DNA of 64,000 nt from IMGVR_UViG_3300045974_000132:222394-286393; one strand, 5' to 3'; shown: positions 13,245 through 43,614, counted from the first letter of the stretch. Made by a program: numbers and translations. The notes: a model not told the origin generated them from the sequence alone.

Positions 13245-13667
13245 ATGTTTTCAGAACAGTTCCTTAAAGAACTTAGGCATGCTATAGCCAGTGTAAGAAC
13301 TTCTAGGTTTTCTGTTCCTATTAGTGTCCAACTACTCGCAAACATGCGAAGGTCTATCACTGATAAAAATATACCTGTTACGCATATCGTATGCGGTTCA
13401 GATGTATGGCCTATACTGTCTTCAGATGACACACTGCGTGCCCTGATTATACCTACTGAAAACATAGAGCAGGTTAATATAGGCTTCGTTGCAACAGTCT
13501 TTGCGCTACCCATAATCTGCGAAGGTGCGCTACCTAAGCTTAAACGATTTTTAAAGCCGAATACTCTTGCTGTTGCAGCCCTGGATACTACACATAAGAA
13601 TACTTGGCATACTAAATTTCCAGAGCTTAGTGTCTTAGATGCAGTAGCCTCTTCTATCAGCCGTTAA
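13245..13667 (+). CDS. capsid-domain-like paralog 1
   Basis: PISVQLLANMRRSITDKNIPVTHIVCG, shared with 13719 and 43156. Confidence 0.6.
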   Translation: MFSEQFLKELRHAIASVRTSRFSVPISVQLLANMRRSITDKNIPVTHIVCGSDVWPILSSDDTLRALIIPTENIEQVNIGFVATVFALPIICEGALPKLKRFLKPNTLAVAALDTTHKNTWHTKFPELSVLDAVASSISR

Positions 13668-13718
13668 TTAAAAACTTCTGTTTAATGTTCTTCAATCAAC
13701 TGAGTTTAAGGATGTATA

Positions 13719-14312
13719 ATGAATAAACAAGCATTGGAAACCTTAGAAGCACTGCATAAAGATATGGGTAAACAGATAGAAACTTTGCTGCAGGATATTA
13801 AGCGTTCTGTTCCTCTTTCACCCGAACTAAAAGAGTTCCTTACTGAGTGGGCCGCTGGTCGTACACCTGTAGCCCCGATTGATGACCAGCCCCCTACTTA
13901 CTCAAAAGAATTTCTTTTGCAAGTTCGTGAGTTGGCTTTGCATGAGTCTTCAGAGGTGCGCTTTATTACACCTATTAGTGCGGGTCTTATTTCCAACATG
14001 CGTAGCTCCATCAGCAAGGGTTGCTCTTTCACACCTACGCACATACTAGCAGGCAATGACTTTTTTAAGTTGATGTTTTCAGAATACACTTTAAGCAAAC
14101 TGTTCGATCCGATTACTCGTTATACCGATGTTATATCTGGTTACTTGGGTACTCTGATTGGTCTAGATGTTCTCATTGACTCTTACGACTCTCCGGAGAA
14201 ACGAATTCTTCCCAATGGGTTTTTAGCAGTTGTTTCTATAGAAACTTATAAGAACGATGACGGTTCTATCTACCTTAAAATGCACCGCTGCGTTAATGCG
14301 TTAATCTCATAA
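13719..14312 (+). CDS. capsid-domain-like paralog 2
   Basis: NMRSSI..THILAG..LFDPITRYTDVISGYLGTLIGLDVLIDSYDSPEKRILP. Confidence 0.6.
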   Translation: MNKQALETLEALHKDMGKQIETLLQDIKRSVPLSPELKEFLTEWAAGRTPVAPIDDQPPTYSKEFLLQVRELALHESSEVRFITPISAGLISNMRSSISKGCSFTPTHILAGNDFFKLMFSEYTLSKLFDPITRYTDVISGYLGTLIGLDVLIDSYDSPEKRILPNGFLAVVSIETYKNDDGSIYLKMHRCVNALIS

Positions 14313-14334
14313 TTAAAAGCTACAAGGTTGGAAT

Positions 14335-16713
14335 ATGCTTACCATCAGCGGATTAGACTTGAACGACGTTATCTCCTTCAAGAAAGTATCTGTAGACTTT
14401 AAAGAAGGCCTTACATATGTTCGAGGTATTAACAAAGACTCTGATCTAGCTCGCCCTACAGGTAACGGTACAGGTAAGTCATTGTTCTTCTCTGCAATAC
14501 CTAATGTTGTCTATGCTGCACCTCCTCTTGCTTTACGTAAGAAGTCGCGTAAAGACTTGCTTGGGCGTAAGGGTAGTAACATCGGATTTATTCTTAGACC
14601 TAGTGCAGATAGTCCTGAGTATGAGATTATTCAGACAGGCAGCAAATACACAATCTTTGAAGATGGAAAAGACTTAGAGGTAAATACAATTCCTCGATCT
14701 GAAGCTTTCATCAAGAAGCTATTCCCTATTTCTGAGATTGACTTCTACAGTAGGTGCTATGTATCAACACAGAAGCCCTACGCTTTACTGCGTGATTCTG
14801 ATTCCGATCGGCTTCAGCATATAATTGATATTGCTCTCCTAGATCAGTATAGCGACCTGCAAAAGTTCTTCTCCTTGAAAGCAAGTGCAATTAAGGATAA
14901 TGAAATTAGGCTGTCAGTGCTGGAGCAGCAACTAGCAGGTGTTAAGAAGAAACTTCGTGAGTCTAAGTCTGACATTACGAAGGTAGAGTATCGCAAGTTG
15001 AAGACCCAGTATGATGGGTATGCTGAGAAAATTGAAAAGCTCCAATCTAATAAGTTTAAGCTACTCACCCAACAACAAGCTCTCCAGTCATTGCTTACTG
15101 TCGAGAAAGAGTTGGACGAACTTCGTAGCAAATACACCTTTAAAGCACCGCCTTCTAAACAGTTGAAAGCTTTACGTGCAGATAAAGATGCAGCTAGTGA
15201 ATGGGAAACTTATGTTGCAGAAGTAGCTAAGGCTTCTAAGTCCCAGCAACGCTTACGCCTTGCAATAAAGAAGATTGAAAAATCTCTGCCGGAAGAGGCT
15301 ACCGAGGGCTTGAGCAAACGTGCTAAGACCTTGAACAAAGAATTGAATACCGTGACTTCCGAAATTGCTAAAATGGAAGGCATTGAAACGCAAGTTGAAG
15401 AACTGCGTGAGGAACAAACAAGCTTACAAGAAGAGTTCGATGGGCTTGAAGTAGATGAAAGTAAAGTAGTCCTTGAGAAGGACTACGGTGAGTTTATTGC
15501 TGAGGCAAAGATTCGTCTAAAGTTGGAGGCTTTGTTAGAGCATGAAGATAGCCATGCTTCATCCGGGACTTGCCCTACTTGCCAAGCTGAGATTGACTAT
15601 GACGCCATTCGGAGTATTGTTAGAGGTGAACGTAAGGCTTTAAACATTGCTGTAAAGAACAAGAAGGCTCAGCAATGTTTAATCGCTCTTAAGGATGTTA
15701 AACGGAAACTTGCAAAGCTTTCCTTTGATGCCCCTGAACTTAAAGCACTCCGCACTAAAAAGAAGCAACTCGCAAAGGATGTTGAGACCGTTGAAGAGAA
15801 CTTGGATAAGTTTGAGGAGTTGTCTTCCCTTCGCAATCAACTACGCGCAATTGAAATACCGGTTGAACCCGAGTGCGAGAAGCCTGCCCTAGATTTATCC
15901 GATATTGAAGAGGGCATTGATCTTTGCCATGAGATTGAAAAACATCTAAAGGCTAAGGCTGCAATCATTGAAAATCATTCCGACTTTGAATCCTTTCGTA
16001 GTGCCAAGGCTGTTTCTACGGAGAATACAAAGGTAGGAGAACAGATAGCAAAGATTTCCAAGGAGATACGTACCCTAGAATCTGCTCAGGCTGACTGTGC
16101 CGGTAAGGTTTCTTCCTATGAGCAATATGCCAATACTGTAAAAATATATCAAGGGGAGCAAGAAACTACCCAAGCTGAGATTGATAAGCTCCGTCCTTCC
16201 GTGGATGATAAGAAGCTAGTTACAATCCTTAGCAAAGCTTACGGCACTAAAGGCTTGCGGGCTTATGCTGCAAATGCCTTTTGCAACCTCTTGCAAACCA
16301 ACTTAAATCACTATCGGGATTTGATCTTTGCAGAGCCCTTTGAATTTAGTGTAGAGGCATCGGATTCGGGCGTTTCTATAATGGTTGATCGTAATAACGG
16401 TAAGCCGGATGCTGTATCAGATGTACGCCATTTATCGGGTGCAGAGTCTGAGTGTTTTGCTCTGCTTTGCGCTGCCTCACTGATAACACTGACGCCTGAT
16501 AGTCGCAAGTTAAATATGATCGTGCTGGATGAGCCTACCTCACACATGCACCAAGTTACACGGGAACTTTTTAATCAGAAGTTCGTACCGTTTCTACGTG
16601 AGCTAGTTCCTTCTATCTTTATTATTACACCGCACGACGATGACTGTAGCCCCAATAGTGCTGAATGGGTCGTCGAAAAGAGCAAAGGTGTATCACGACT
16701 AATTCAAATGTGA
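14335..16713 (+). CDS. SbcC/Rad50-like (gp46-type) recombination ATPase
   Basis: Walker A NGTGKS, long coiled coil with CPTC zinc hook, signature LSGAE, Walker B VLDEPT and H-loop ITPH. Confidence 0.93.
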   Translation: MLTISGLDLNDVISFKKVSVDFKEGLTYVRGINKDSDLARPTGNGTGKSLFFSAIPNVVYAAPPLALRKKSRKDLLGRKGSNIGFILRPSADSPEYEIIQTGSKYTIFEDGKDLEVNTIPRSEAFIKKLFPISEIDFYSRCYVSTQKPYALLRDSDSDRLQHIIDIALLDQYSDLQKFFSLKASAIKDNEIRLSVLEQQLAGVKKKLRESKSDITKVEYRKLKTQYDGYAEKIEKLQSNKFKLLTQQQALQSLLTVEKELDELRSKYTFKAPPSKQLKALRADKDAASEWETYVAEVAKASKSQQRLRLAIKKIEKSLPEEATEGLSKRAKTLNKELNTVTSEIAKMEGIETQVEELREEQTSLQEEFDGLEVDESKVVLEKDYGEFIAEAKIRLKLEALLEHEDSHASSGTCPTCQAEIDYDAIRSIVRGERKALNIAVKNKKAQQCLIALKDVKRKLAKLSFDAPELKALRTKKKQLAKDVETVEENLDKFEELSSLRNQLRAIEIPVEPECEKPALDLSDIEEGIDLCHEIEKHLKAKAAIIENHSDFESFRSAKAVSTENTKVGEQIAKISKEIRTLESAQADCAGKVSSYEQYANTVKIYQGEQETTQAEIDKLRPSVDDKKLVTILSKAYGTKGLRAYAANAFCNLLQTNLNHYRDLIFAEPFEFSVEASDSGVSIMVDRNNGKPDAVSDVRHLSGAESECFALLCAASLITLTPDSRKLNMIVLDEPTSHMHQVTRELFNQKFVPFLRELVPSIFIITPHDDDCSPNSAEWVVEKSKGVSRLIQM

Positions 16714-16720
16714 GAATCAA

Positions 16721-17545
16721 ATGGTCAGAGTATTCGGTGTTGCAAATCATTCGCCTGAAGCAGTAATCCGCGCCTTAATTAAATTCAAACGTGCGGGAAC
16801 TCCTGATATAGGTATTCTACCTGTTCAGAATATTCTGTCAATTAAGAAGCCCGTTAAGCACACCTTTCTTTTGTTCTTGACGGTAGCTGACTTGATGCGT
16901 AATTTGGAGGTATTAAATTCTCCTAAGTACGAAGGCTGTAGTGCTATTGTATTTGCCAATCCTATGAAGCTACATGAATTGGTAGGATTGCAACCCTTAG
17001 ACTTTGCACCTAATCCTGAGTTTAAAGGCTTCGGCTTTACTCTAAGAACTCTCGATATGAATAAGATTCGCACCTTCAAAGGTAGTGAGACTATTGAACG
17101 GCGTTCTGGTAAGTATCTTGCGAAGCTTGTTGAACATGTTCAGCAGGGTAGCTTACTAAATCCGTTTATGACTTTCATCTATACTCTACCTTCAGTAATG
17201 CAAGGGCCAACTAAGACAGCCGTACTTCGCTGGCTGTTTACTGGAAAGTCGGATACATATCTTACTAAAGCTCTTGACGGTATTGAGCAAGGGACAGTTA
17301 CTGCGCGTGTTCGGACTAAGTTGAAAGACATACTTCTAACGGAAGTTGGTCGTTCTTTCCAAGTGGCTTTTAAAGCCTACAGGGAATCCAAGAAAGCAGG
17401 GAGCGTTAATATAACAAAACTGGCTAAAGCCCATAGCGTGTCTGACTACGAAATGCGTTACATCCTTTCTGTTATTGAGAATGTTAAACGCTCTGATCTG
17501 TATGTGGACAGCTTCGATAAAGCCAAGAACAGAAAGCGAGCCTAA
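16721..17545 (+). CDS. hypothetical protein
   Basis: 274 aa ORF directly after the Rad50-like gene. Confidence 0.8.
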   Translation: MVRVFGVANHSPEAVIRALIKFKRAGTPDIGILPVQNILSIKKPVKHTFLLFLTVADLMRNLEVLNSPKYEGCSAIVFANPMKLHELVGLQPLDFAPNPEFKGFGFTLRTLDMNKIRTFKGSETIERRSGKYLAKLVEHVQQGSLLNPFMTFIYTLPSVMQGPTKTAVLRWLFTGKSDTYLTKALDGIEQGTVTARVRTKLKDILLTEVGRSFQVAFKAYRESKKAGSVNITKLAKAHSVSDYEMRYILSVIENVKRSDLYVDSFDKAKNRKRA

Positions 17546-17547
17546 TC

Positions 17548-17991
17548 ATGTCCTCAGATGACACTGAGGTTTCCAGAATTCTGATAAATCTAGGTGGTGA
17601 ATTTTCGCTAGGTGACGGACGGGTTGGTACAGTGGTAAGTTCCCCCGAATTGTCTGAGCTTAATTCATTCCTGGGTGTCCTTAAGGAATCACTGGAACCG
17701 ACAAACGGTTTTGAAACGTTATTTGCAAAACTCGGTAAGAAGTTTCGTAAGCAAAAAGGAAGTATTCTTGAGATTCGGACTACTTCGGATGGGAAAGAAC
17801 TCACCCATTCATTCAGTCTGTCTAATCAGGAAAATTTGACTTATGAAGAAACGGATGAATTGCTGACAAAAGCAGGGTGGTCTTTAGACTGCTGGCATCC
17901 GTTGGAAATCAGTTGTGCTGAAGGGACGGGATCAGTAGCTACAGGGCACGCAGCTAAACTCCTAATTAAACACCTTCAGCAAACCCTATGA
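17548..17991 (+). CDS. hypothetical protein
   Basis: Last ORF before the sigma70 promoter. Confidence 0.7.
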   Translation: MSSDDTEVSRILINLGGEFSLGDGRVGTVVSSPELSELNSFLGVLKESLEPTNGFETLFAKLGKKFRKQKGSILEIRTTSDGKELTHSFSLSNQENLTYEETDELLTKAGWSLDCWHPLEISCAEGTGSVATGHAAKLLIKHLQQTL

Positions 17992-18036
17992 CAATCGTAT
18001 TGCTAGAGGGTCTGAAAACTACGCAAAATCGAGGGC

Positions 18037-18065
18037 TTGACAAAGTTCTTGATTTATGCTATAAT
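18037..18065 (+). promoter_or_regulatory. consensus sigma70 early promoter
   Basis: TTGACA (18037-42), 17 bp spacer, TATAAT (18060-65) with extended -10 TG. Confidence 0.92.
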
Positions 18066-18161
18066 ACGTATACGCGCGAAGCTGTGCGCGAAGAATGATT
18101 ATTGAATACTGCTCGAATGAGTATGAGCGTGTTTTGTCGAACCTGTACGACGGAGCCAAAA

Positions 18162-18539
18162 ATGCAAGCCCAAGTCCAAAGCCTGATTAGTACCGTGAAC
18201 CTTTCCTCAATCGTTCCCGAAGAAGATTGCACCCTCTGCACTCTTGTAAGCCTGCTCAAGCAGGTTGAACTGTCTGACGAAGTAGATCAAGCCGAAATCT
18301 TTGAAGAGGACGGCTGCCGCTACCTTACGAACGGCCAGTTCGATGAAATCCCTCCTTTGATTCAACGCATTCTTTCTCTTGCAGATGACCTCCTCATTAC
18401 GAGTGACGGTGGTTGCAACTATGCTTCCCATAGCTACCTTCGTGGCTTTGGCTTTAACGTCACGCCTGGTGAGAAAGATTCGTTCGGGTGGCTCACAGGT
18501 TGTATTCATACAAAGAAGGGTATCATCGTTTACGGCTAA
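18162..18539 (+). CDS. early hypothetical protein
   Basis: GGAG RBS before ATG 18162. C-terminus GEKDSFGWLTGCI. Confidence 0.75.
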   Translation: MQAQVQSLISTVNLSSIVPEEDCTLCTLVSLLKQVELSDEVDQAEIFEEDGCRYLTNGQFDEIPPLIQRILSLADDLLITSDGGCNYASHSYLRGFGFNVTPGEKDSFGWLTGCIHTKKGIIVYG

Positions 18540-18567
18540 GCATAAACCTGTTTAGCCCATTTTATTT
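18534..18567 (+). terminator. hairpin followed by a T-rich tract (possible weak terminator or processing site)
   Basis: GGCTAAGCA-6 nt-TGTTTAGCC, then CATTTTATTT. Confidence 0.45.
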
Positions 18568-18584
18568 ATACGTCGAGGTCAATC

Positions 18585-18887
18585 ATGGCTACCTTAAAGC
18601 AATTGCGTGAGTTATCCGCAAAAGCTCTTGCAAAGCATCACAGTTATGAGCGCCGTATTAAAGCGCTCCTTGAAAAACGAAAAGAAACATGCCCTCACAT
18701 CAAGACGCGCGTTGTTCGCCAAGACTATATGGAAGAAGGGCGTATGCGATCTCCTATAGAATGGGAAGAGCTTTTATGTTGTCGGTGTAAGAAGGTCCTT
18801 GCTACGCGCGGTGACAATGTAGTAAAAAGCGAATGGCAAGCTAAAGAAGGTATCAATCTTGAAGCCGTTCTAGTAAAGGGGACTTAG
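18585..18887 (+). CDS. early hypothetical protein (Cys motifs)
   Basis: GAGG RBS, CPH and CCRC. Confidence 0.75.
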   Translation: MATLKQLRELSAKALAKHHSYERRIKALLEKRKETCPHIKTRVVRQDYMEEGRMRSPIEWEELLCCRCKKVLATRGDNVVKSEWQAKEGINLEAVLVKGT

Positions 18888-18893
18888 CAAATT

Positions 18894-19040
18894 ATGAATA
18901 GTTTTTTGCGGTATCTTGTGTTGTACATCCTGTTAGCTGTGTATGGTGTTTACATAGGGGCTGAGATTTCTACTCTGATCCTCTCTTCCGTTGCACTAAC
19001 AATTTTAATGGGTATGGCTCCTTCGAGCTTATCTATCTAG
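18894..19040 (+). CDS. small membrane protein (48 aa, not in ORF track)
   Basis: MNSFLRYLVLYILLAVYGVYIGAEISTLILSSVALTILMGMAPSSLSI fills the gap. Confidence 0.65.
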   Translation: MNSFLRYLVLYILLAVYGVYIGAEISTLILSSVALTILMGMAPSSLSI

Positions 19041-19049
19041 GGAGCAGTA

Positions 19050-19529
19050 ATGATTTCGTTTTTCTTCTTTACTAAGAAAGCTGTTTACAAGCGGCAGCTT
19101 CTTCGCATTGATGTTGAAACCTCTTATCACAGTTTGAAAGATGCAAGCAAGCGCGTGTGCCCTGAAGTTCTTTTGTTTGCAGCAGCTGGCATATATGACC
19201 ACGATGAAAAGCGGTGGCCTAAGTTCAACTACGATGCGTTGCCTAATCCCAGACTTACTGAATCTGAAACACAAACGATTCTACCGGATGAAGTAAAGGT
19301 TGAAGTCGATCATACCTTCTTCAACATGATGGGTTTATGTTGGCACATCATTTCAGATGATCGCTTTCATCTTGACTTCCGAAACTGCTGCTCTAGGTTT
19401 TGTGAGTTCAATGCTTCATTGAAGATGGGCCAGTCTGCGGAGTGTGAGGCCCTGAAAGAGTTTTTGAAGAGCAGGTGTCATGGACAACTCCATGAAGAGT
19501 CTCTTGCTTATACGTATTTTCCGTTGTAG
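19050..19529 (+). CDS. early hypothetical protein
   Basis: GGAG RBS. Confidence 0.7.
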   Translation: MISFFFFTKKAVYKRQLLRIDVETSYHSLKDASKRVCPEVLLFAAAGIYDHDEKRWPKFNYDALPNPRLTESETQTILPDEVKVEVDHTFFNMMGLCWHIISDDRFHLDFRNCCSRFCEFNASLKMGQSAECEALKEFLKSRCHGQLHEESLAYTYFPL

Positions 19530-19565
19530 TTCAAAACCTGTAGTCAAATCGTGAGGGTAGCTAAA

Positions 19566-20752: not shown

Positions 20753-20755
20753 AGG

Positions 20756-21658: not shown

Positions 21659-21674
21659 TAACGCGGGGAATGAA

Positions 21675-21989: not shown

Positions 21990-21991
21990 AA

Positions 21992-22405: not shown

Positions 22406-22406
22406 C

Positions 22407-22634: not shown

Positions 22635-22638
22635 CACT

Positions 22639-23570: not shown

Positions 23571-23578
23571 GGACTAGC

Positions 23579-24006: not shown

Positions 24007-24075
24007 AAGTAAATGTGTATGAGGCTATTCGGCCTCTACTAGATTAACTAAGTAGCAAAACGTTTGGAGACTGCA

Positions 24076-24651: not shown

Positions 24652-24652
24652 A

Positions 24653-24883: not shown

Positions 24884-24884
24884 C

Positions 24885-32851: not shown

Positions 32852-32853
32852 TC

Positions 32854-33875: not shown

Positions 33876-33891
33876 TTGTCGGGAGCCCAAG

Positions 33892-36439: not shown

Positions 36440-36447
36440 GGTGTAAT

Positions 36448-36798
36448 ATGTCTTTTGATAAAAGTGATATATCGAATTGGGTTAAGTCTGAAGATGGAAA
36501 GCACTTTGAACTCAAACCTGAGTTGATGCAGCCTTATAAAGAGTCTGCTCAAAAGCAACTTGCGTTGTGGGTGGCAGGTAATCCTCAGCACAATACCTTC
36601 GCTGATGAATGCTGTCCTGACTTCTCTTGCTGCCAACCAGAACTTCTATGGCCTGAGGAGAAACGCAAAGCTTTTGCAGAAGCAAATGAGGAATATCGAA
36701 ATCATATGCTGATGGGAGGCATCAATGCTATTATGGTGTTGAACGATACCGAAGCTTACGTTGCAGGCCAGATTCCCGATACTGATGTGAGGCAATAA
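36448..36798 (+). CDS. hypothetical protein (ECCPDFSCC motif)
   Basis: GAGG RBS before MSFDK. Confidence 0.7.
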   Translation: MSFDKSDISNWVKSEDGKHFELKPELMQPYKESAQKQLALWVAGNPQHNTFADECCPDFSCCQPELLWPEEKRKAFAEANEEYRNHMLMGGINAIMVLNDTEAYVAGQIPDTDVRQ

Positions 36799-36799
36799 C

Positions 36800-37330
36800 A
36801 TGAATACTACTACGCTGACCAGCACTTTGTTTTGTCCGGCCTGCACTGCACGGTTATGTATAGTAAAGCAAGATGAAAACAGTATGTTAAATGCAGAGCA
36901 GTTTGATTCGTTGAAAGCTGGCGATTACTACTGCCCTAACTGCCCTCCTACTAAAGAAGGCTTGAAGTATCGTTACTTCAATACAACAGATGCTGCCTTC
37001 ATCACAGCTTCTACTTTTACGGATAAGGTGAATCTAGCTGAATTCTCTGAAGAGTTTGTTGCAGCCTGTCGTGAAATGAAGTTACCGCTTGAGACCCTTA
37101 CGCAAAGCTCAATAAAAATTCTTGAGCATGTATGGGATCATGGTCGAGGTGTGGCAAGTGCTGATCCTGTAGACCTTCTCAATCTTTTGATTCTGCAAGA
37201 AAAAGCAAATATGCTTAATCTATCTGCTTCTGGTCCCGCTAAGTACGGATACGAGTTGGTGCATGTTTTTATGACTTCTGATATTGTGCAACCTCGTTAC
37301 AAAAAACTATATGAGGAGATGACCAAATGA
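36800..37330 (+). CDS. zinc-ribbon protein
   Basis: CPAC..CPNC. Confidence 0.65.
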   Translation: MNTTTLTSTLFCPACTARLCIVKQDENSMLNAEQFDSLKAGDYYCPNCPPTKEGLKYRYFNTTDAAFITASTFTDKVNLAEFSEEFVAACREMKLPLETLTQSSIKILEHVWDHGRGVASADPVDLLNLLILQEKANMLNLSASGPAKYGYELVHVFMTSDIVQPRYKKLYEEMTK

Positions 37331-37599
37331 TAAAGAAGAAGTATTGGAAGTTCACTAAGTATAGTCATGCTGCGGGCTATGCTTATAGTACTACGTCTGA
37401 TCTTATCCAGCACAACATGCCCGATCGGGAAGATCAAATCTCTCAACTACAAAATCGTATTGAATACTTGACGGACATTGTTGCCTTCTTGCTTGATACC
37501 AAGAAGAGTGTTGATGCTGACAAGCTTAAGGCGTTGCTGTCTTTGCACGACCTTGAAGAAGTGTCTGAAGAAGAATACGAAAAACATCGTTGGAGTTAA
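37327..37599 (+). CDS. hypothetical protein
   Basis: GAGGAG RBS. Confidence 0.65.
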   Translation: MIKKKYWKFTKYSHAAGYAYSTTSDLIQHNMPDREDQISQLQNRIEYLTDIVAFLLDTKKSVDADKLKALLSLHDLEEVSEEEYEKHRWS

Positions 37600-37603
37600 T
37601 CTC

Positions 37604-38203
37604 ATGCAATTATTCAAACAAGTACCTAGTGAGCTTCAATCCAAGTACATTGTCAATGGCTGGCGCTCTGCTGACGGACTAGTATCAAAAGAGATAGAAG
37701 TTCCCACAGGCATTACTGATCCTTGGGAAAAGCTGGACATAGTTAGTCCTACTCTTATTCAGCGCGGTAAGATCAATAGGCCGTTGAACAAGTTTAAAGG
37801 GTTGTCTTTAACTAGTGCTGTTACTTTGCACTATATGGGTATCGACATCCTTAAAAATAATGTGTTGACTATGTCCTTACTTCACATGGATGCGCAGTTG
37901 TTCAACTATAAAACAATAGTAGTGCCTACTGTTACAAAATTGTTCAGCGGTAAGCCCTGCTCCCTTCGTGTCTACGGTAGCTTTGACACACTCAATCAAG
38001 TGAATCACTACACCAACTACCTGCAAAATATGTATGCGGGGAATCTTCCTCTTAGAAGCTGGCCGGACTTTGACGCTGAGTCTATTACTTCTGACTTTTG
38101 GTGGGATGTAGATAACGGAATAATGTTTAGCTTTGATCGTAATTTCATGACCGACCTACCAATCATTGTCCAAGCTACCTTGAATCAGGTAGCTATTAAA
38201 TAA
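37604..38203 (+). CDS. hypothetical protein
   Basis: Start MQLFK. FWWDVDN motif. Confidence 0.7.
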   Translation: MQLFKQVPSELQSKYIVNGWRSADGLVSKEIEVPTGITDPWEKLDIVSPTLIQRGKINRPLNKFKGLSLTSAVTLHYMGIDILKNNVLTMSLLHMDAQLFNYKTIVVPTVTKLFSGKPCSLRVYGSFDTLNQVNHYTNYLQNMYAGNLPLRSWPDFDAESITSDFWWDVDNGIMFSFDRNFMTDLPIIVQATLNQVAIK

Positions 38204-38204
38204 A

Positions 38205-38235
38205 ACTGTAAAATAAAGATAGCAATATCTAATTA
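38205..38235 (+). promoter_or_regulatory. ACTGTAAAATA plus CTAATTA tandem promoter-like motifs
   Basis: Variants of both recurring intergenic motifs in one 45-bp gap. Confidence 0.5.
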
Positions 38236-38248
38236 AGGACCTATTGTC

Positions 38249-38569
38249 ATGTCTCGTTGTGGCCTTGAAACTTATTCTCCTCCGGCACGTGTTGACTTTA
38301 ACCCGGAAGACCAAGAGCATCTACTTGCTCTCGCACTACTTCAGTTGCACGGCAGGCAGCATCCTACACTGCGCTTTAAGTTGAATCCTACGCAGTACGG
38401 TAACGTGTATCTGGCGTTGATTGACAAGTTTATCCGAGCTTATATACCTGAAGACATTCAGCTACAAGCTTCCGTATATGCAGAAGATCGCAAACCCTTA
38501 ATCATCGGTAGCTTGATTGACAGTGCAACTGATGTACGTATTAAACTGAAGGAACCCAAAAATGGTTAA
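38249..38569 (+). CDS. hypothetical protein
   Basis: AAGGA RBS. Confidence 0.7.
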   Translation: MSRCGLETYSPPARVDFNPEDQEHLLALALLQLHGRQHPTLRFKLNPTQYGNVYLALIDKFIRAYIPEDIQLQASVYAEDRKPLIIGSLIDSATDVRIKLKEPKNG

Positions 38570-39302
38570 GAAACTTCCTGGGCCAAATGCCTCGTCGAAT
38601 AAAAAGATTTTCCATGACGGCGCTTATAAGATAGCTGCCTCTACTAAGACGGATAGCATTATTATCTTCCGTCGTCAAGATTCTGGTAAGTACAAACAAG
38701 CTGATATTGTCTCGGCTACTAACAACAATTACAGTGCTGCGGTTAAACGAATCAATCGTATGCACGCCCGTGACAAAAGTGCTGCAATGATTGCAAATAA
38801 CATATCTCGTATTGCGAAGGCCGCAGATGAAGCAGTCTCTCCGATACGCACTAAAGTTCCACTTGAGCGTAAGGTGCAAGAAGACCTTCAAAATTTCGCT
38901 CAGTCTTCTTTTACTCTTCCTAGCAACATTCCAAATGTAAGTCGTACATACCTGATTCGTAAAGCAAAGAAGAAAATCGTAGGTAGTAAGGACACTACAT
39001 TAGATGCTACTTTGTATCTGGTTGCGACTTACGACTTAAATAAGATAATTAATATTGACCATTTCATCGGTGTAGGCTGTGTAAAGAAAGCTATTGAGCG
39101 CGCCCGACTTGATGCCTCTTTGCTTAAGCCTGCTGAAATAGTTGTTCAAACACGCGGTGAAAACTGGGTAGGTGAATCTGCAAGCTTCTCAGCCAAACAT
39201 GTTATCTATATAGGTAGTAAGGAATCTGTTGAACATGTTCAACAAGGTTTAACAGGGGCTATCAACAAATTCTTTTTAAAGCTGACTAGCAAAAAGCCAT
39301 AA
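38562..39302 (+). CDS. hypothetical basic protein
   Basis: 246 aa ORF, AAGGA RBS. Confidence 0.75.
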   Translation: MVKKLPGPNASSNKKIFHDGAYKIAASTKTDSIIIFRRQDSGKYKQADIVSATNNNYSAAVKRINRMHARDKSAAMIANNISRIAKAADEAVSPIRTKVPLERKVQEDLQNFAQSSFTLPSNIPNVSRTYLIRKAKKKIVGSKDTTLDATLYLVATYDLNKIINIDHFIGVGCVKKAIERARLDASLLKPAEIVVQTRGENWVGESASFSAKHVIYIGSKESVEHVQQGLTGAINKFFLKLTSKKP

Positions 39303-39307
39303 TGCTA

Positions 39308-39315
39308 CTAATTTA
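39308..39315 (+). promoter_or_regulatory. CTAATTTA motif (putative late promoter class B)
   Basis: CTAATTT recurs at 40924, 45702, 48039 and 58297. Confidence 0.5.
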
Positions 39316-39369
39316 TGTAGGATGCTTATATTGTATTTGCATTTTATTCACAGATTAGGAGCAACTGCT

Positions 39370-39738
39370 ATGCCCATACTGTCACAAAAAGAAAAGCTAC
39401 ACCTTCTTGTTGTTCGAGACGCCCGTAAGCCTGTAGTCTTTGAAGTCTCTGACATAACGCCGACTATGCTGGAGCAAGGTGTTGTTGTTTACGGCTCTCA
39501 ATCTTTTTCAGGTGATTACAATCCTTACTTTTTTGTGTATAAGGACATTGTAAACATCTACCACGTTATTAAATTTACGCAGATTGAAGCTTCTGAAGTA
39601 TTTCAAACTAGGTATGCAGAGGAAGCTTTATTTAAAGCGCAAACCCATAGTGAAGAAGCTCTGAGCATTACCAATACTGCTGTAAAGTCATTAGGTGGTG
39701 TGCCTATGTCTTTAAAAGCACTGTCCTGCAAGGTGTGA
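39370..39738 (+). CDS. hypothetical protein
   Basis: TAGGAG RBS before MPILS. Confidence 0.7.
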   Translation: MPILSQKEKLHLLVVRDARKPVVFEVSDITPTMLEQGVVVYGSQSFSGDYNPYFFVYKDIVNIYHVIKFTQIEASEVFQTRYAEEALFKAQTHSEEALSITNTAVKSLGGVPMSLKALSCKV

Positions 39739-39739
39739 T

Positions 39740-39994
39740 ATGGAATATTTGAATATCGTTTTCAAAACATTGGTAGACTTGTGGCTATTTGACGTTGATG
39801 TGTTTAGCAGCAAGTGGTTGTATATACCTTTGTGCATCCCAGCAATGGTCTATATGATGTTCTTCATGATGAAATGGACAGTCATCACTATGCCCATATG
39901 GTTGCCAATAACTATACTTGTTGCAAGCGCATCTTCAATAATAACCAGCATATCTAATGGGCTGGCTTCCATAATAACTGCTATTCGCAAATAA
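39740..39994 (+). CDS. small membrane protein
   Basis: Hydrophobic, KWTVITMPIWLP. Confidence 0.7.
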   Translation: MEYLNIVFKTLVDLWLFDVDVFSSKWLYIPLCIPAMVYMMFFMMKWTVITMPIWLPITILVASASSIITSISNGLASIITAIRK

Positions 39995-40003
39995 GGTATC
40001 ATC

Positions 40004-40612
40004 GTGTCTCAGGATCTGTCTCAACAAACGCAAGAGCAACAAGAAAACCCTATTCGTGATTATGGTACATTCGATCCGTTGAAGGAAACGTCAAACTATA
40101 TAAATACTTGTCTTTGTGGAAAAGAACTCGATAAAGAAAACATCCTATATGGGCAACCTGAACCTGCTCAGTTAGGATTGAAAGAAGGCAGTGACATTCG
40201 TATCAAACGTTTCTTTGTCTGCTGCCCGTCTTGCGGTAGTAAAGGGCCTGCAACTAAGTTGGCTATATACGCTGCCTTGCAGTGGAACCTTAGCTTCTTG
40301 TGCTGCAAACCTTCTTACAGAGAACTTCCTTTGTTTGGCTTATCTGGCTTATCTGGTGTAGAGGCTGCTACAAAACTCCAAGCTATTCGACGCGATCTTA
40401 AGGAGCGCCTTGACGAATGTGCAGAGCGCCTGAAGTTGGAAGATGTGACGAAGCATCCGGGTCCAAGGTATCATGCAAAGTTAGGTGCTTACTTTGCATG
40501 GAACTTTTATGGGTTGCATCTGCTATCTGATAACTTGTTCTTCAGAGGTAATCCTCACGGTGTTAAAGGTAGCATCACAAACTCAAACTCAACTGAAACG
40601 GGAGTAGCATAA
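40004..40612 (+). CDS. zinc-ribbon protein, Lar (restriction alleviation)-like segment
   Basis: CLCG..VCCPSCGSKGP..AALQWN. Confidence 0.55.
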   Translation: MSQDLSQQTQEQQENPIRDYGTFDPLKETSNYINTCLCGKELDKENILYGQPEPAQLGLKEGSDIRIKRFFVCCPSCGSKGPATKLAIYAALQWNLSFLCCKPSYRELPLFGLSGLSGVEAATKLQAIRRDLKERLDECAERLKLEDVTKHPGPRYHAKLGAYFAWNFYGLHLLSDNLFFRGNPHGVKGSITNSNSTETGVA

Positions 40613-40927
40613 ATGGCTGATATTAAGGTAGCTAGATTGGTAACTGGTGAAATTGTCATCTTTGAAGAACTGGGTTCTGATGAACAAAATATCATTATGC
40701 AGAATCCGCACCTGCTCATTAATAGCCACGCAGGTCCAGGACTTGCTCCTCTGATGCCGTGGGCCGCAAAGGGGCGTAACTTTGTTATCCACATGCCTTC
40801 TGATAAGATCATGTTTTTCTTCCCTGACGATCATTGTGAACCTATTGTTACGAGTTACATTCAAGCTACTAGCACCATTGATCTTTCTGCCCTGGGTAAT
40901 GTTTCTCAGTTTGTGAAGTCTAACTAA
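40613..40927 (+). CDS. small beta-barrel (Sm-like) phage protein
   Basis: IKVARLVTGEIVI..LAPLMPWA pattern. Confidence 0.5.
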   Translation: MADIKVARLVTGEIVIFEELGSDEQNIIMQNPHLLINSHAGPGLAPLMPWAAKGRNFVIHMPSDKIMFFFPDDHCEPIVTSYIQATSTIDLSALGNVSQFVKSN

Positions 40928-40965
40928 TTTATATACTCGATCAACTCTAAGTCACTTCACACACC

Positions 40966-41322
40966 ATGCCAACAACTTCAACCGCAGCACCTATTACACA
41001 AGAAGCTGCCGTAGTTCCTGATTTCTACTTTACATGTTCTACTCTTAATTGCACATTGCGGGCGTCTTCGTGTGCAAGAAATCGAAAGGAATCAAGTAAG
41101 GTGCAATCATTGATGATTATCAAAGGTTCTGCCCGTTGTAAAGGTTGTAAGAATTTTGAAAACGAACAAGCTTCTACTCCTATCTCGATTGAAGTATATC
41201 ATGCTCAAGTGATGTCCGATTCAGCAGCACAACCTAAAGCAGGATACGATCACAATCAGCCTAAGCCCGGTATTCATTCCTTGTGGGAAGGCCGTGGACG
41301 TAGTAAAACACGCGTAAGTTAA
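40966..41322 (+). CDS. hypothetical Cys-containing protein
   Basis: C..LNC..C..CKGC. Confidence 0.65.
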   Translation: MPTTSTAAPITQEAAVVPDFYFTCSTLNCTLRASSCARNRKESSKVQSLMIIKGSARCKGCKNFENEQASTPISIEVYHAQVMSDSAAQPKAGYDHNQPKPGIHSLWEGRGRSKTRVS

Positions 41323-41336
41323 ATACTGAGAACATA

Positions 41337-42215
41337 ATGGCTAAAACAAAAACACTGCTTGTAGTTGACGGATTTAATGTATTGTACCGAGGATTTTGGG
41401 CTTCCAACTATGGACGCAAGCCTGAAGATATGGACGCTGCTTTGGCAGTACGCGGTGTTATATCAATCATCATGTCCGACCTTGTTTTTGTAGAAGCTAC
41501 TCATTGTGCAGTAGTGTTCGATAGAGAAGGTGACAACTTCCGTCATCGTCTCTACCCTGAATACAAAGGTACTCGTGAGCGTCTTGATGAATCTGTCGAA
41601 CTCCATAAACAAATATTCCCATTGAAGCGTTTGATTAATGCAATGGGTATTAAAGTCTTTGGTATTCGTGGGCAAGAGGGTGACGATCTAGTAGGATCAC
41701 TTGCTGTATCTGCAAACCAAGATGATCCTAAAGCACAAATCTATATCGGTAGCCGTGATAAAGACTTTGCTTCTCTGGTAAACAAACGAATTCATCTGCT
41801 TCAACCTCAGAAAGAAATCCTTGATGAACAAGGTGTATTCGACAAGTGGGGTGTTAAGCCCTCGCAGATGGTTGAATACTTGATGTTGCTAGGTGACGGT
41901 GTAGATAACATTCCAGGTGTCTATAAAGTAGGCCCTAAAGTTGCTGCAAAGATTTTGAATACACACGGTAGCATTAAGAAATGGCTACCTACTAAGAAGA
42001 CACCTGCTCTGCATAAGAACGTAGAGGCTGTAAAGGACTTCTTCCCAACAAGTAAGAAGCTGATTACGATCAAGACCAACTGTTTCCCCGACATGACTCT
42101 TGATAAGCTTAGAATAAAGCCGTACAATGAAAAACAACTTGAGCGCATCTGCAAAGAGTTGGACTTTCATAGTACCTATCACCAAATACGAAAACAGCTT
42201 GGTAAGCTTCCATGA
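41337..42215 (+). CDS. 5'-3' exonuclease / flap endonuclease (PolA N-terminal domain-like)
   Basis: LLVVDG..YR, VVFD, FRHRLYPEYKGTR, EGDDLVGSLA, SRDKD and LLGDGVDNIPGV..VGPKVAAKIL (H3TH). Confidence 0.95.
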   Translation: MAKTKTLLVVDGFNVLYRGFWASNYGRKPEDMDAALAVRGVISIIMSDLVFVEATHCAVVFDREGDNFRHRLYPEYKGTRERLDESVELHKQIFPLKRLINAMGIKVFGIRGQEGDDLVGSLAVSANQDDPKAQIYIGSRDKDFASLVNKRIHLLQPQKEILDEQGVFDKWGVKPSQMVEYLMLLGDGVDNIPGVYKVGPKVAAKILNTHGSIKKWLPTKKTPALHKNVEAVKDFFPTSKKLITIKTNCFPDMTLDKLRIKPYNEKQLERICKELDFHSTYHQIRKQLGKLP

Positions 42216-43066
42216 CAACTTCCCTAACAGTAACGTATCCCATTGTTGTATATGAACGGGATTTCTCAAATAGCCCTTTCGACACCTTATCTGTAGATGA
42301 CAAGATTAAGGCAACTATTCAAAAACGTAAACGATCACAAGCCCGACTTGATTCAGCGGTTGCTAAGATTTCACGTATGACTGCTTCCATCAATAAGCAC
42401 ACTGAAGAGAGTGCTGCTGCCTTGCATGGACTGATGATTGAAATTCAGCATTTGGAAGAAGAGCAACGCGCACAAATTCTTGCCAACCAACCTAAACTGT
42501 CTTCTGAGGAAGAACATAGGGCAGAAGCTGATTTAGAGTTTGAGTTTGACCAGTATGATAGGGATCAACAGCGTAAGGAAGCAGAAGAAGCGATACGTAA
42601 TTTTAATGAAATGTTTTCTATGCCCGCTAAAGATGCTAGGGTAAAGAAACTGTATCGTAAGATTTCAATGCGCACCCATCCCGATCGCACTAAAGATACT
42701 GAGAAGCACAAACTATTTGTTGCGGCCAAACAATACTACGCCGATAACAACCTAGAAGGGTTGGAGAACATCTGGCAAATATTGAATGGTAAGGTTAGCT
42801 CTCTGTTTGATCGCCTGTATAAGAGATTGCACGAAGAATTGATGCAGTTGGAGTTGGTCGAGAAGATACTTAATTCAACCTTATCAAGTGAGGACTATGA
42901 ACTTGCTCAGTTATTTGAGAAAAATAGTTTCATTGTCCTGGAGCAGATTGAAAAGAAGTTGCAGTTCCAAATAATTGTGTTACGTTCTCAGCGTAACAAC
43001 CTTCGTGAAGCACTAGGTAAGCCTGATGTATGTGCAACCAGTAGCTTTGCAAACTTCGAGTTTTAA
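42212..43066 (+). CDS. coiled-coil protein with J-domain-like HPD motif
   Basis: VKKLYRKISMRTHPDR..LFVAAKQYY. Confidence 0.72.
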   Translation: MTTSLTVTYPIVVYERDFSNSPFDTLSVDDKIKATIQKRKRSQARLDSAVAKISRMTASINKHTEESAAALHGLMIEIQHLEEEQRAQILANQPKLSSEEEHRAEADLEFEFDQYDRDQQRKEAEEAIRNFNEMFSMPAKDARVKKLYRKISMRTHPDRTKDTEKHKLFVAAKQYYADNNLEGLENIWQILNGKVSSLFDRLYKRLHEELMQLELVEKILNSTLSSEDYELAQLFEKNSFIVLEQIEKKLQFQIIVLRSQRNNLREALGKPDVCATSSFANFEF

Positions 43067-43088
43067 AAGAATCGGAAAACTAGGTCGT

Positions 43089-43132
43089 AAAAAAGCCCGC
43101 AGTCCTTAATTGGATTTGCGGGCTTTTCTTTT
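43089..43132. terminator. bidirectional intrinsic terminator between convergent blocks
   Basis: AAAAAAGCCCGCA..TGCGGGCTTTTCTTTT. Confidence 0.9.
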
Positions 43133-43155
43133 GTCCAGCGTTCAGAGATTAGGTA

Positions 43156-43614
43156 TTACGCTACTAAGGCAGAAACAAGCTGTCGAATAATAGGTTCTTC
43201 TGCAGGAGTCGGAGCCATAGTTATAGCAATGACTGCACAGAAGTCTTTAGGCAGCAATCGTTCTTCTGGTGCAAAGTAAGCATCTGTCAGAACATCCATC
43301 CCTAATAACACTCCTAAGAAACCTGAAAGTAGGTCTTCTCTTCGTGAAGTAGGGTCGAACAACATAGAGAATGATGGATCTACTACCATCTTAGACAGTA
43401 GAGCAGAGCCTAATATAATATGAGTAACCGGGATAACTTTGTCAGTTATAGCGGATCGCATGTTTGCAATTAGCGTGGGCGAAAGTGGAATTACAAAGTC
43501 TGATTCACGCGCTTTAGCTACAGCTTCAACCAACAAAGCTTTGATAAAGGATTCTTCGTACTTTACTGTTTTGATTAAGCATACGGGCTCCCTTGAAATA
43601 GGAAAGGGTGCCAT
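43156..43614 (-). CDS. capsid-domain-like paralog 3
   Basis: PLSPTLIANMRSAITDKVIPVTHIILG..LFDPTSRREDLLSGFLGVLLGMDVLTDAYFAPEERLLP. Confidence 0.6.
   Translation of the reverse strand: MAPFPISREPVCLIKTVKYEESFIKALLVEAVAKARESDFVIPLSPTLIANMRSAITDKVIPVTHIILGSALLSKMVVDPSFSMLFDPTSRREDLLSGFLGVLLGMDVLTDAYFAPEERLLPKDFCAVIAITMAPTPAEEPIIRQLVSALVA

What the first reader, a model, noticed from the sequence alone, without database searches (positions are those of the whole stretch)
13245..43614. Three dispersed stand-alone paralogs resembling a major-capsid subdomain
Seen: 13245..13667, 13719..14312 and 43156..43614(-) share P[IL]S..L..NMR..I....THI..G. The latter two also share FDP......SG[YF]LG.L.G.DVL.D.Y..PE.R.LP. 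All are only 140-197 aa and lie outside the structural block. From recollection, this pattern matches the A-domain region of HK97-fold major capsid proteins of RSL1/Lu11/Y3-like jumbo phages. Inference: capsid-fragment decoys against capsid-sensing defences (CapRel and Lit are known to sense capsid proteins), or assembly modulators against competing phages.
Basis: partly seen in the sequence, partly recalled or inferred. Interest (0 to 1): 0.72.

Follow-up and report, generated by a model that had tools for sequence, protein, structure and literature searches.

The report
Stand-alone capsid A-domain mini-proteins
A 286-kb jumbo phage carries three small genes that are old, diverged copies of only the central (axial) domain of its own shell protein; they belong to a fast-evolving accessory family for which I found no description, and their function is unknown, possibly mimicry of the shell protein in conflicts with host sensors.

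Summary
The three ORFs (140, 197 and 152 aa) are paralogs (BLASTP E 6e-29 to 2e-16). Each is homologous to residues about 198-365 of the phage's own major capsid protein (MCP), which lies 126 kb upstream of the window (E 9e-12 to 9e-8; profile E 3e-39).

A confident model of pC (pLDDT 92) matches only HK97-fold proteins in six structure searches, one of them an unbiased scan of 48,161 PDB representatives. The proteins consist of the A-domain alone. N-arm, E-loop and P-domain are missing.

They are not a quirk of this genome. At least 69 clusters (50% identity) of such stand-alone proteins exist in metagenomes. They form a branch separate from the MCPs. Probable distant members occur in cultured phages Y3, Lu11, Motura and Noxifer.

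They sit in variable slots of replication and recombination operons, are absent from PaBG and RSL1, and diverge far faster than their neighbours (30-45% against 70-90% identity).

The function was not established. The co-fold with the MCP gave no answer. The decoy idea remains plausible but untested. A published preprint reports that several bacterial sensors bind exactly this face of the A-domain. The closest described kind is the cellular "A-domain encapsulins", but these proteins are not members of that family.

The parts
13245..13667 (+). pA, 140 aa: stand-alone HK97 A-domain protein; subfamily with a C-terminal insertion (H-K-x-T-W in pA)
   Evidence: ORF. BLASTP to own MCP residues 229-270, E 9e-8. 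Profile match in the own genome, E 7e-67 with A1 and 2.8e-39 with A2. Orthologues P0005, P0008, P0152 and P0009 occupy the same slot in L034, L035, L039, L040 and L041. Groups with them in the tree.
13719..14312 (+). pB, 197 aa: about 60-aa N-terminal extension plus an A-domain; closer to pC than to its neighbour pA; absent from the same slot in relatives L039-L041
   Evidence: ORF. 40% identical to pC, E 6e-29. BLASTP to MCP residues 230-312, E 6e-9. Groups with pC, P0004 and P0006 in the tree. In the relatives the slot holds a single mini.
43156..43614 (-). pC, 152 aa: stand-alone A-domain protein; last gene of the RuvC-like operon on the minus strand
   Evidence: ORF. BLASTP to MCP residues 226-312, 33% identity, E 9e-12. 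AF2 model pLDDT 92.2, pTM 0.83. Fold matches are HK97-fold proteins only. Orthologues P0004 and P0006 lie in the same position after a ~200-aa gene.
12760..13242 (+). 160-aa ORF immediately upstream of pA (2-nt gap here; overlapping in relatives). A syntenic neighbour; no functional link shown
   Evidence: ORF. 47-49% identical orthologue directly before the mini in L039 and L041. No Pfam, PHROG or PADLOC family. Atlas look-alikes are weak.
12545..12763 (+). 72-aa ORF with a lipoprotein-type signal; first gene of the accessory cassette between the clamp loader and the SbcC-like gene
   Evidence: ORF. 59% identical orthologue in L041. The cassette is absent from this junction in PaBG, Lu11 and HRDY3. 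The lipobox was read by eye.
43638..44252 (-). 204-aa core gene (phrog_17686, function unknown) directly upstream of pC
   Evidence: phrog_17686 E 5e-32. Homologues in 62 cultured phages of the group. Followed by a pC orthologue in L005 and L036, but by no mini in PaBG, Lu11 or HRDY3.

Best explanation
SHOWN: the three genes encode compact, folded proteins made of the HK97-fold axial (A) domain alone. They correspond to MCP residues about 198-365, minus the ~28-residue P-domain hairpin and the C-terminal tail. They lack the N-arm, E-loop and P-domain that knit capsomers into a shell. They belong to an old lineage that split from the MCPs of the Lu11/PaBG/Y3/RSL1-type jumbo phages. That lineage has persisted as a non-core, fast-diverging gene family with variable copy number, inserted in variable slots of replication and recombination operons. 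INFERRED (the mechanism I commit to): they act in conflict as non-assembling mimics of the MCP A-domain. They would be made from the replication-gene operons and would occupy proteins that recognise the capsomer-forming face of free MCP. The most likely targets are host capsid sensors (Avs7/8/10- or Dsr1-type, or others), which cannot clamp the missing P-domain and E-loop and so would bind without switching on. The several diverged paralogs would then cover different sensors. The identity and evolution part is about 0.95 certain. The confidence given below is for the inferred mechanism.
For: Identity: paralogy; homology to the own MCP (local hmmsearch E 2.8e-39 over MCP 198-365; alignment). 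The model has pLDDT 92, and every structure library returns only HK97-fold proteins, as does an unbiased scan of 48,161 PDB representatives. Family: 187 profile hits; of the best 150, 78 are <=200 aa and 77 of those start with M. The minis form one side of a branch with SH-aLRT 97 (69 short proteins plus tandem-domain proteins) against the MCPs. Accessory and fast-diverging: the mini is 30-34% identical between the window and L039/L041, while the flanking clamp loader, SbcC-like gene and next gene are 69-80%. Between L039 and L041 the mini is 45% against 55-90% for neighbours. No mini lies at the corresponding junctions in PaBG, Lu11 or HRDY3, and a profile scan of the whole PaBG and RSL1 genomes finds none. 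Copy number ranges from 0 to 3. Shared signature: the seven best-conserved mini positions (D87, P88, G98, G101, G105, D111, L121 in pC) are the same residues as the best-conserved MCP positions. [quoted passage not shown] The abstract of PMC11087589 states that DSAD1, a phage-encoded protein, counteracts DSR2, a sensor of the phage tail tube protein.
Against: There is no direct evidence of any binding partner. The host is unknown (pond metagenome), so no cognate sensor could be tested. MCP-specific conserved residues have been lost or are variable in the minis (D257, R296, F264, V302, and W343, N355 and R323 in the deleted parts). The minis have conserved positions of their own (P43, L48, M52, H65), and the column-wise conservation correlates only weakly with that of the MCPs (Spearman 0.30). 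They are therefore not faithful surface copies of the present-day MCP (33-36% identity). A mimic of a trigger could activate the sensor rather than block it. Expression timing is unknown: the promoter and terminator scans are at chance level, and no RNA run holds the phage. Fast divergence is also what relaxed constraint would give.
Confidence: 0.33

Rival explanations
1. Oligomeric A-domain 'facets' that bind and stabilise a partner protein, as proposed for Family 4 A-domain encapsulins. The mini would self-assemble through the two main A-domain helices into pentamer- or hexamer-like rings and associate with the product of the gene just upstream (160-aa ORF for pA; the 204-aa phrog_17686 protein for pC; UvsX-like recombinase region in Y3).
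For: The model of pC superposes on the solved A-domain encapsulin 2PK8 over 83 of its 94 residues (Z 6.8). In the archaeal systems the A-domain gene lies directly downstream of its partner enzyme gene, and a GAPDH-A-domain complex is reported (PMC8346489). Here each mini also lies directly downstream of a conserved ORF, with a 2-23 nt gap or an overlap, and that pairing is kept in relatives. The minis sit inside replication and recombination operons here and in Y3.
Against: The phrog_17686 gene exists without a mini in PaBG, Lu11 and HRDY3, so no obligate pairing exists. The very fast divergence relative to neighbours is unusual for a housekeeping chaperone. None of the 78 members matches PF08967. 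Oligomerisation was not tested.
Confidence: 0.2
2. MCP binders. The mini would dock on the capsomer-forming face of an MCP subunit in place of a neighbouring subunit. It would either mask or hold the phage's own free MCP before assembly, or poison capsomer formation of a co-infecting related phage (dominant-negative interference).
For: The minis retain the fold and the best-conserved A-domain signature shared with the MCPs. According to PMC8346489, the two main A-domain helices form the main subunit interface of a facet. Accessory status and fast divergence fit phage-phage competition. The pA/pB cassette starts with a small lipoprotein-like ORF, a gene type often used for superinfection exclusion (own knowledge). 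From my own knowledge, HK97-fold homologues that redirect a helper's capsid assembly exist in satellites (Ccm of cos-type PICIs).
Against: A role in the phage's own assembly is unlikely: the profile scans find no mini in PaBG or RSL1, and copy number varies, while the MCP is well conserved (about 80% to the relatives). The MCP+pC co-fold gave no answer, which is neither support nor evidence against. MCP-conserved residues D257 and R296 are not kept. A poison of related capsids would have to spare the phage's own MCP.
Confidence: 0.2
3. Non-functional remnants of partial MCP duplications, or miscalled ORFs.
For: They are short, have no family annotation, and diverge fast.
Against: All three are intact ORFs with plausible ribosome-binding sites. 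The same architecture is kept in at least 69 clusters at 50% identity, nearly all starting at their own Met just before the domain. Orthologues hold the same syntenic positions across genomes whose flanks are only 70-80% identical. The alignment supports a compact, confident fold in which the P-domain hairpin is cleanly excised. The family has conserved positions of its own.
Confidence: 0.03

Closest known systems
Major capsid protein of the Lu11/PaBG/HRDY3/Y3/RSL1-type jumbo phages (phrog_2522; remote solved relative: 6WKK, Gp27 major capsid protein)
   Same: Clear sequence homology over the C-terminal ~165 residues. Same A-domain fold and the same best-conserved D-P...G..G...G.....T-D signature. 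35 of the 78 short proteins hit phrog_2522.
   Different: The minis lack the first ~197 residues (N-terminal region, N-arm, E-loop, spine-helix part of the P-domain), the P-domain hairpin and the C-terminal tail. They lie outside the structural module, are non-core, and form a separate branch.
Family 4 'A-domain encapsulins' (DUF1884, PF08967; structure 2PK8 of Pyrococcus furiosus PF0899), Andreas & Giessen 2021, PMC8346489
   Same: Stand-alone HK97 A-domain of roughly 100-150 aa with all other HK97 elements lost. The pC model superposes on 2PK8 (Z 6.8, 83 of 94 residues). Each lies directly downstream of another conserved gene (one search compared).
   Different: No sequence membership: 0 of 78 hit PF08967. 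The origin is independent, from the MCP of one phage clade. The minis are encoded by phages, not by thermophilic archaea or Bacteroidetes, and have no enzyme partner of known function. The function of the encapsulin family is also still unknown.
DSAD1, a phage-encoded protein that counteracts DSR2, a sensor of the tail tube protein (PMC11087589)
   Same: What I propose the minis work like: a phage protein that neutralises a sensor of a structural virion protein (abstract seen). From my own knowledge, not read here, DSAD1 does this by occupying the sensor region without activating it.
   Different: As far as I know, DSAD1 is not a homologue of the tail tube protein it competes with, whereas the minis are homologues of the presumed trigger. 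Nothing about binding was tested here.
Full-length MCP paralogs with specialised structural roles (for example T4 gp24, the vertex protein, a paralog of gp23; structure 1YUE)
   Same: Duplicated capsid gene kept within one phage genome. 1YUE is among the fold matches.
   Different: gp24 keeps the whole HK97 fold, is encoded in the head module and is built into the shell (own knowledge). The minis cannot form shell contacts because the P-domain, E-loop and N-arm are absent.

Membership tests
HK97-fold major capsid protein (phrog_2522 lineage) | Significant sequence similarity to the family | tested here: met
   BLASTP to the own MCP gives E 9e-12, 6e-9 and 9e-8. The profile of the minis against the MCP gives E 2.8e-39. 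The minis taken singly hit PHROG MCP families only weakly (E 0.0023-0.19).
HK97-fold major capsid protein (phrog_2522 lineage) | Complete HK97 architecture: N-arm, E-loop, P-domain and A-domain | tested here: not met
   The minis align only with MCP residues 198-365 and lack the ~28-aa P-domain hairpin and the C-tail. In the model, residues 19-152 form one compact domain. The best fold matches cover about a third of full MCPs (TM by target 0.16-0.30).
HK97-fold major capsid protein (phrog_2522 lineage) | Encoded in the head-morphogenesis module | tested here: not met
   The true MCP lies next to a virion structural protein (phrog_16710) 126 kb away. The minis lie among clamp loader, SbcC-like, exonuclease and RuvC-like genes.
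HK97-fold major capsid protein (phrog_2522 lineage) | Present in the virion shell | not testable with these tools
   This is an uncultured phage from a pond metagenome. No virion proteome of a relative that lists the homologues was found.
Family 4 A-domain encapsulins (PF08967 / DUF1884) | Protein consists of the isolated HK97 A-domain | tested here: met
   Model against 2PK8: Z 6.8, rmsd 3.3, 83 of 94 residues aligned. Domain boundaries come from the alignment to the MCP.
Family 4 A-domain encapsulins (PF08967 / DUF1884) | Matches the PF08967 profile | tested here: not met
   No Pfam hit for pA, pB or pC at E<=1. 0 of 78 family members hit PF08967 at E<=0.01.
Family 4 A-domain encapsulins (PF08967 / DUF1884) | Two-gene operon directly downstream of a partner enzyme | tested here: inconclusive
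   Each mini lies directly downstream of a conserved ORF (160 aa; 204 aa phrog_17686), and the pairing is kept in relatives. Those ORFs have no recognisable enzyme family, and the 204-aa gene also occurs without a mini.
Family 4 A-domain encapsulins (PF08967 / DUF1884) | Self-assembly into pentameric facets (proposed, not proven, for the family) | not tested
No homo-oligomer prediction or experiment was possible.
Phage anti-defence proteins that neutralise a structural-protein sensor (DSAD1-like mode of action) | Binds the sensor's ligand site without activating it and relieves defence | not testable with these tools
   Neither the host nor its sensors are known.
Phage anti-defence proteins that neutralise a structural-protein sensor (DSAD1-like mode of action) | Accessory, variable, fast-evolving gene | tested here: met
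   The mini is 30-45% identical where the flanks are 55-90%. No mini lies at the corresponding junctions in PaBG, Lu11 or HRDY3. 0 to 3 copies per genome.
Phage anti-defence proteins that neutralise a structural-protein sensor (DSAD1-like mode of action) | Expressed before or together with the trigger | tested here: inconclusive
   The minis are co-oriented with replication and recombination genes. In Lu11 the homologous clamp-loader operon carries an annotated putative middle/late promoter. Consensus scans here are at chance level, and no RNA data exist.

The most novel reading that the evidence does not exclude
These proteins are the first example of a phage copying one domain of its own capsid protein to blind capsid-sensing immunity. 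On this reading, a diversified family of stand-alone A-domain mimics binds the MCP pocket of sensors such as Avs7/8/10 or Dsr1 (or CapRel- and Lit-like systems) without triggering them, and each paralog is tuned to a different sensor.
Probability: 0.25. Interest if true: 0.85.

Novelty: new variant of a known kind. Interest (0 to 1): 0.62.

Why it matters
Capsid proteins are now known to be major triggers of bacterial immunity, and according to a 2026 preprint the A-domain face is what several sensors grip. A large phage family that consists of exactly this domain, is accessory and diverges fast gives a concrete, cheap-to-test candidate for a new counter-defence principle: self-mimicry of a trigger. 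If the function instead resembles that proposed for A-domain encapsulins, it would show that the HK97 A-domain has been cut out and reused independently in viruses and in cells. That bears on how the HK97 fold evolves and on what the minimal self-associating unit of a capsid protein is. In either case, about 70 clusters of unannotated phage proteins and several 'hypothetical' or mis-annotated genes in cultured jumbo phages (Y3 gp244 and gp016; Lu11 gp106, annotated 'major head protein') receive a structural identity.

Tried and rejected
- The first AF2 run on pA used only the 3-sequence alignment and was useless (pLDDT 43). The second run, with 78 sequences, worked.
- The word-indexed protein search found only pC itself.
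- The search for related loci failed with both family alignments because no stretch was conserved enough. With pC alone it found nothing. With the MCP it found three partial contigs that hold no mini.
- blastn of the region against GenBank phages gave no match.
- tblastn of pB and pC against phages hit only full-length MCP genes. The minis of cultured phages are visible only to profiles and fold search.
- The MCP+pC co-fold gave a median score of 0.27 against a mark of 0.32. The verdict was 'no answer', and I do not use it either way.
- Promoter and terminator scans were at chance level.
- PADLOC gave no hit for the minis or their neighbours.
- I rejected the DNA-mimic idea: the proteins are not unusually acidic (pI 9.1, 5.4 and 5.0; family median 5.4, the same as the MCP domains).
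- Near-identical contig pairs show no substitutions in the mini genes, so no dN/dS estimate was possible.
- Laying three pond-metagenome runs on the region gave only identical fragments, with no RNA and no variants.
- The genome search could not open the Logan, ENA or JGI records, so I scanned the fetched loci locally instead.
- The atlas search for the 160-aa neighbour gave only weak winged-helix look-alikes on a poor model, and I do not use it.
- Four literature searches found no description of phage stand-alone A-domain paralogs. The library is incomplete, so this does not prove that none exists.


Full report
**1. The observation**

The three ORFs exist as described: pA 13245..13667(+) 140 aa, pB 13719..14312(+) 197 aa, pC 43156..43614(-) 152 aa.
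- The paralogy is far beyond chance: pB-pC 40% identity over 114 aa, E 6e-29; pA-pC E 6e-21; pA-pB E 2e-16.
- Each ORF starts with ATG behind a purine-rich stretch, and its GC content matches that of the genome.

**2. What they are related to**

The window is the last 64 kb of a 286,393-bp viral record with direct terminal repeats.
- A profile of the three proteins finds one further match in that genome. It lies inside a 365-aa ORF at G000:C1:95806-96903(-).
- That ORF is the major capsid protein: phrog_2522, E 4e-100, and a remote match to the solved Gp27 major capsid protein 6WKK, E 1.6e-7.
- Its nearest cultured relatives are Pseudomonas phages HRDY3 (58%), Lu11 (57%) and PaBG (54%). Dickeya and Erwinia Y3-like phages follow, and Ralstonia RSL1 is more distant.
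- pC, pB and pA align with MCP residues 226-312, 230-312 and 229-270 at 33-36% identity (E 9e-12, 6e-9, 9e-8).
- With a deeper profile of the family, the match covers MCP 198-365, that is, to the MCP's C-terminus (E 2.8e-39).
- The alignment shows that about 28 MCP residues (roughly 318-342) and the last ~10 residues have no counterpart in the minis.

**3. Structure**

- An AF2 model of pC built on 78 family sequences is confident: pLDDT 92.2, pTM 0.83. Residues ~19-152 form a single domain of helices and a five-stranded sheet.
- Foldseek against the PDB returns HK97-fold capsid proteins in all 50 top places, with weak E-values as expected for a sub-domain.
- VIA-align gives Z 8.9-6.5 for those matches. 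HK97 itself scores Z about 7.
- An unbiased scan of 48,161 PDB representatives again returns only HK97-fold proteins in the top 50: phage and herpesvirus capsids, encapsulins, a gene transfer agent, and 2PK8.
- AlphaFold-DB clusters and the ESM atlas agree. In the atlas, TM by query is 0.64, with 124 residues aligned to two MCP clusters.
- Given the boundaries in the sequence alignment, the minis are the A-domain with its preceding helix. The N-arm, E-loop and P-domain are gone. By established knowledge of the HK97 fold, those elements make the inter-capsomer and chain-mail contacts. I did not have coordinates in hand, so I did not map residues onto a capsomer.

**4. A family, not an oddity**

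- An exhaustive profile search of 1.84 billion representatives gave 187 hits at E<=1e-3. Of the best 150, 78 are <=200 aa (77 begin with Met), 21 are 201-329 aa and 51 are MCP-sized. The best-scoring hits are the short ones.
- In a maximum-likelihood tree of 163 domains, one branch (SH-aLRT 97) separates two groups.
  - One group has 77 rows: 69 short proteins, the two halves of tandem-domain proteins P0016 and P0028, and one half of Lu11 gp106.
  - The other group has 86 rows and holds all ordinary MCPs.
- The tree is a quick search, it is unrooted, and it has some long branches. Fifteen short sequences fall on the MCP side: six are nested among MCPs and are probably gene fragments, and nine form a basal group that I did not study.
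- pC and pB group with P0004, P0006 and P0007. pA groups with P0005, P0008 and P0009. The paralogs therefore predate the divergence of several phages, and pB is a relative of pC that sits next to pA.
- No Pfam family matches the minis: 0 of 78 hit DUF1884. PHROGs holds no family of its own for them; 35 of 78 hit the MCP family phrog_2522.

**5. Cultured phages**

- tblastn with pB or pC hits only MCP genes in GenBank phages.
- Fold search in BFVD finds small uncharacterised proteins of Erwinia phage Y3 (125 and 129 aa), Achromobacter phage Motura (116 aa) and Pseudomonas phage Noxifer (138 aa), with TM by target 0.47-0.73.
- The family profile finds the following:
  - Y3 gp244 (125 aa, directly after the UvsX-like recombinase), E 1.8e-4.
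  - Y3 gp016 (129 aa, among DNA polymerase I and primase genes), E 0.013.
  - Lu11 gp106, which consists of two tandem mini-domains (E about 1e-15 each) and is annotated 'major head protein'.
- hhalign gives 81% probability for Y3 gp244 and 43% for gp016. I call these probable distant members.
- In PaBG and RSL1 only the MCP matches.

**6. Genomic setting and rate of change**

- pA and pB lie between the clamp loader (phrog_5846) and an SbcC-like gene (phrog_77). A 72-aa lipoprotein-like ORF and a 160-aa ORF precede them.
- pC ends the minus-strand operon RuvC-like -> 294 aa -> 204 aa (phrog_17686) -> pC. It is convergent with a 5'-3' exonuclease gene and a weak J-domain protein.
- Metagenomic relatives L039, L040 and L041 are collinear with window 1-22 kb. 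They carry one mini (the pA orthologue) in the same slot and have no pB.
- Identities between the window and L039/L041:
  - clamp loader 73%
  - SbcC-like gene 69-71%
  - next gene 78-80%
  - 160-aa ORF 48-49%
  - mini 30-34%
- Between L039 and L041 the mini is 45% identical, against 55-90% for its neighbours.
- pC orthologues follow the ~200-aa gene in L005 and L036.
- In PaBG, Lu11 and HRDY3 the RuvC-to-phrog_17686 operon ends without a mini. At the clamp loader-SbcC junction, PaBG has nothing and Lu11 and HRDY3 have a ~700-aa ORF.
- The minis are therefore accessory genes in variable slots, with 0 to 3 copies per genome, and are the fastest-diverging genes of their blocks.

**7. Conservation pattern**

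- The seven best-conserved positions of the minis (D87, P88, G98, G101, G105, D111, L121 in pC) carry the same residues as the best-conserved MCP positions (D269, P270, G280, G283, G287, D293, L303).
- Several residues kept in about 87-96% of the MCPs are variable in the minis or lie in the deleted parts: D257, R296, F264, V302, W343, N355, R323.
- The minis have conserved positions of their own: P43, L48, M52, H65.
- Column conservation correlates only weakly between the two groups (Spearman 0.30).
- This indicates a preserved fold core with a changed surface, that is, a new function rather than a plain copy.

**8. Function: what could and could not be tested**

- The single complex job (MCP + pC, both with alignments) ended as 'no answer'. 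I do not count it in either direction.
- There are no RNA data and no population variants.
- Promoter and terminator scans are at chance level.
- There is no PADLOC hit.
- The proteins are not acidic, so they are not DNA mimics.
- The function is therefore inferred from anatomy, evolution and the literature.
- A 2026 preprint reports that Avs7 and Dsr1 sense MCPs. [quoted passage not shown]
- Phage-encoded proteins that counteract sensors of structural proteins are known, for example DSAD1 against DSR2 (PMC11087589).
- On this basis I rank the possible mechanisms as follows.
  - A non-assembling A-domain mimic that occupies capsid sensors: 0.33.
  - An encapsulin-Family-4-like oligomeric scaffold or chaperone for the upstream gene product: 0.2.
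  - Binding to MCP itself, either masking the own MCP or poisoning a competitor's capsomers: 0.2.
  - A non-functional remnant: 0.03.
  - The remainder is left for something not thought of.

**9. Comparison with what is known**

- The closest described kind is the Family 4 'A-domain encapsulins' (DUF1884/PF08967, structure 2PK8). These are ~100-aa stand-alone A-domains of thermophilic archaea and a few Bacteroidetes. They are encoded directly downstream of enzymes, are proposed to form pentameric facets, and have no known function (PMC8346489).
- The minis share that architecture and superpose on 2PK8 (Z 6.8). They fail the sequence membership test, arose independently from the MCP of one phage clade, and are viral.
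- They are homologues of the MCP family but fail its defining features: full architecture, position in the head module, and (untested) presence in the shell.
- I found no paper describing phage-encoded stand-alone A-domain paralogs. The library searched is incomplete.

**10. Verdict**

- The decoy or assembly-modulator interpretation is neither shown nor excluded.
- Novelty: a new variant of a known kind, namely truncated stand-alone HK97 A-domains, here as a phage accessory family.
- Interest is moderate to high. The family is large, unannotated, linked to a current question (capsid sensing) and directly testable in cultured relatives.

Noticed in passing
window 12545-12763 (+): A 72-aa ORF with a lipoprotein-type signal peptide (hydrophobic stretch ending in L-A-G-C, read by eye). 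It is the first gene of the accessory cassette that also holds the 160-aa ORF, pA and pB. It is 59% identical in relative L041. Small phage lipoproteins are often superinfection-exclusion factors (own knowledge).
   Followed up: partly
window 4706-5407 (+): A metallo-beta-lactamase-fold hydrolase (PF00753, E 4e-13) with a sub-threshold match to the anti-Pycsar protein Apyc1 (PF23023, 22.9 bits against a cut-off of 50). Its 64-69% identical orthologues in L039-L041 carry a precomputed PF23023 hit. It is a possible anti-defence gene in the same region as HD, DHHA1-like and thymidylate synthase genes.
   Followed up: partly
window 42212-43066 (+): A 284-aa protein with a weak J-domain match that includes an H-P-D motif (PF00226, E 8.6e-5, 23 bits against a cut-off of 27.8). 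It is convergent with pC. It may be a phage co-chaperone; no link to pC is shown.
   Followed up: no
L027 6478-7341 (Pseudomonas phage Lu11 NC_017972.1 77477-78340, gp106): This gene is annotated 'major head protein', but it is a 287-aa protein made of two tandem mini A-domains (E about 1e-15 each). It lies next to a gene annotated as head-tail connector. Metagenomic proteins P0016 and P0028 have the same tandem build.
   Followed up: partly
proteins P0018, P0029, P0041, P0043, P0057, P0067 and others: 21 mid-length (201-329 aa) proteins carry the same domain behind a ~90-aa N-terminal part. Most branch at the base of the MCP side of the tree. They may be a further truncated class or MCPs of other phages.
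   Followed up: no
window 11433-16713, compared with L045, L046 and L047: The junction between the clamp loader and the SbcC-like gene is a variable slot in this phage group. It is empty in PaBG, holds a ~700-aa ORF in Lu11 and HRDY3, and holds the lipoprotein/160-aa/mini cassette here and in L039-L041.
   Followed up: yes
window 44152-45604 (-): The listed ORFs for the RuvC-like protein (44828-45604) and the following 294-aa protein (44152-45036) overlap by about 200 nt. phrog_19006 matches only residues 86-253 of the latter, so its real start is probably further downstream.
   Followed up: no
window 11400-17000: The phage is present in three pond-metagenome DNA runs from three studies: one full-length contig and two sets of identical low-coverage fragments. 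No RNA run was listed as holding it.
   Followed up: yes
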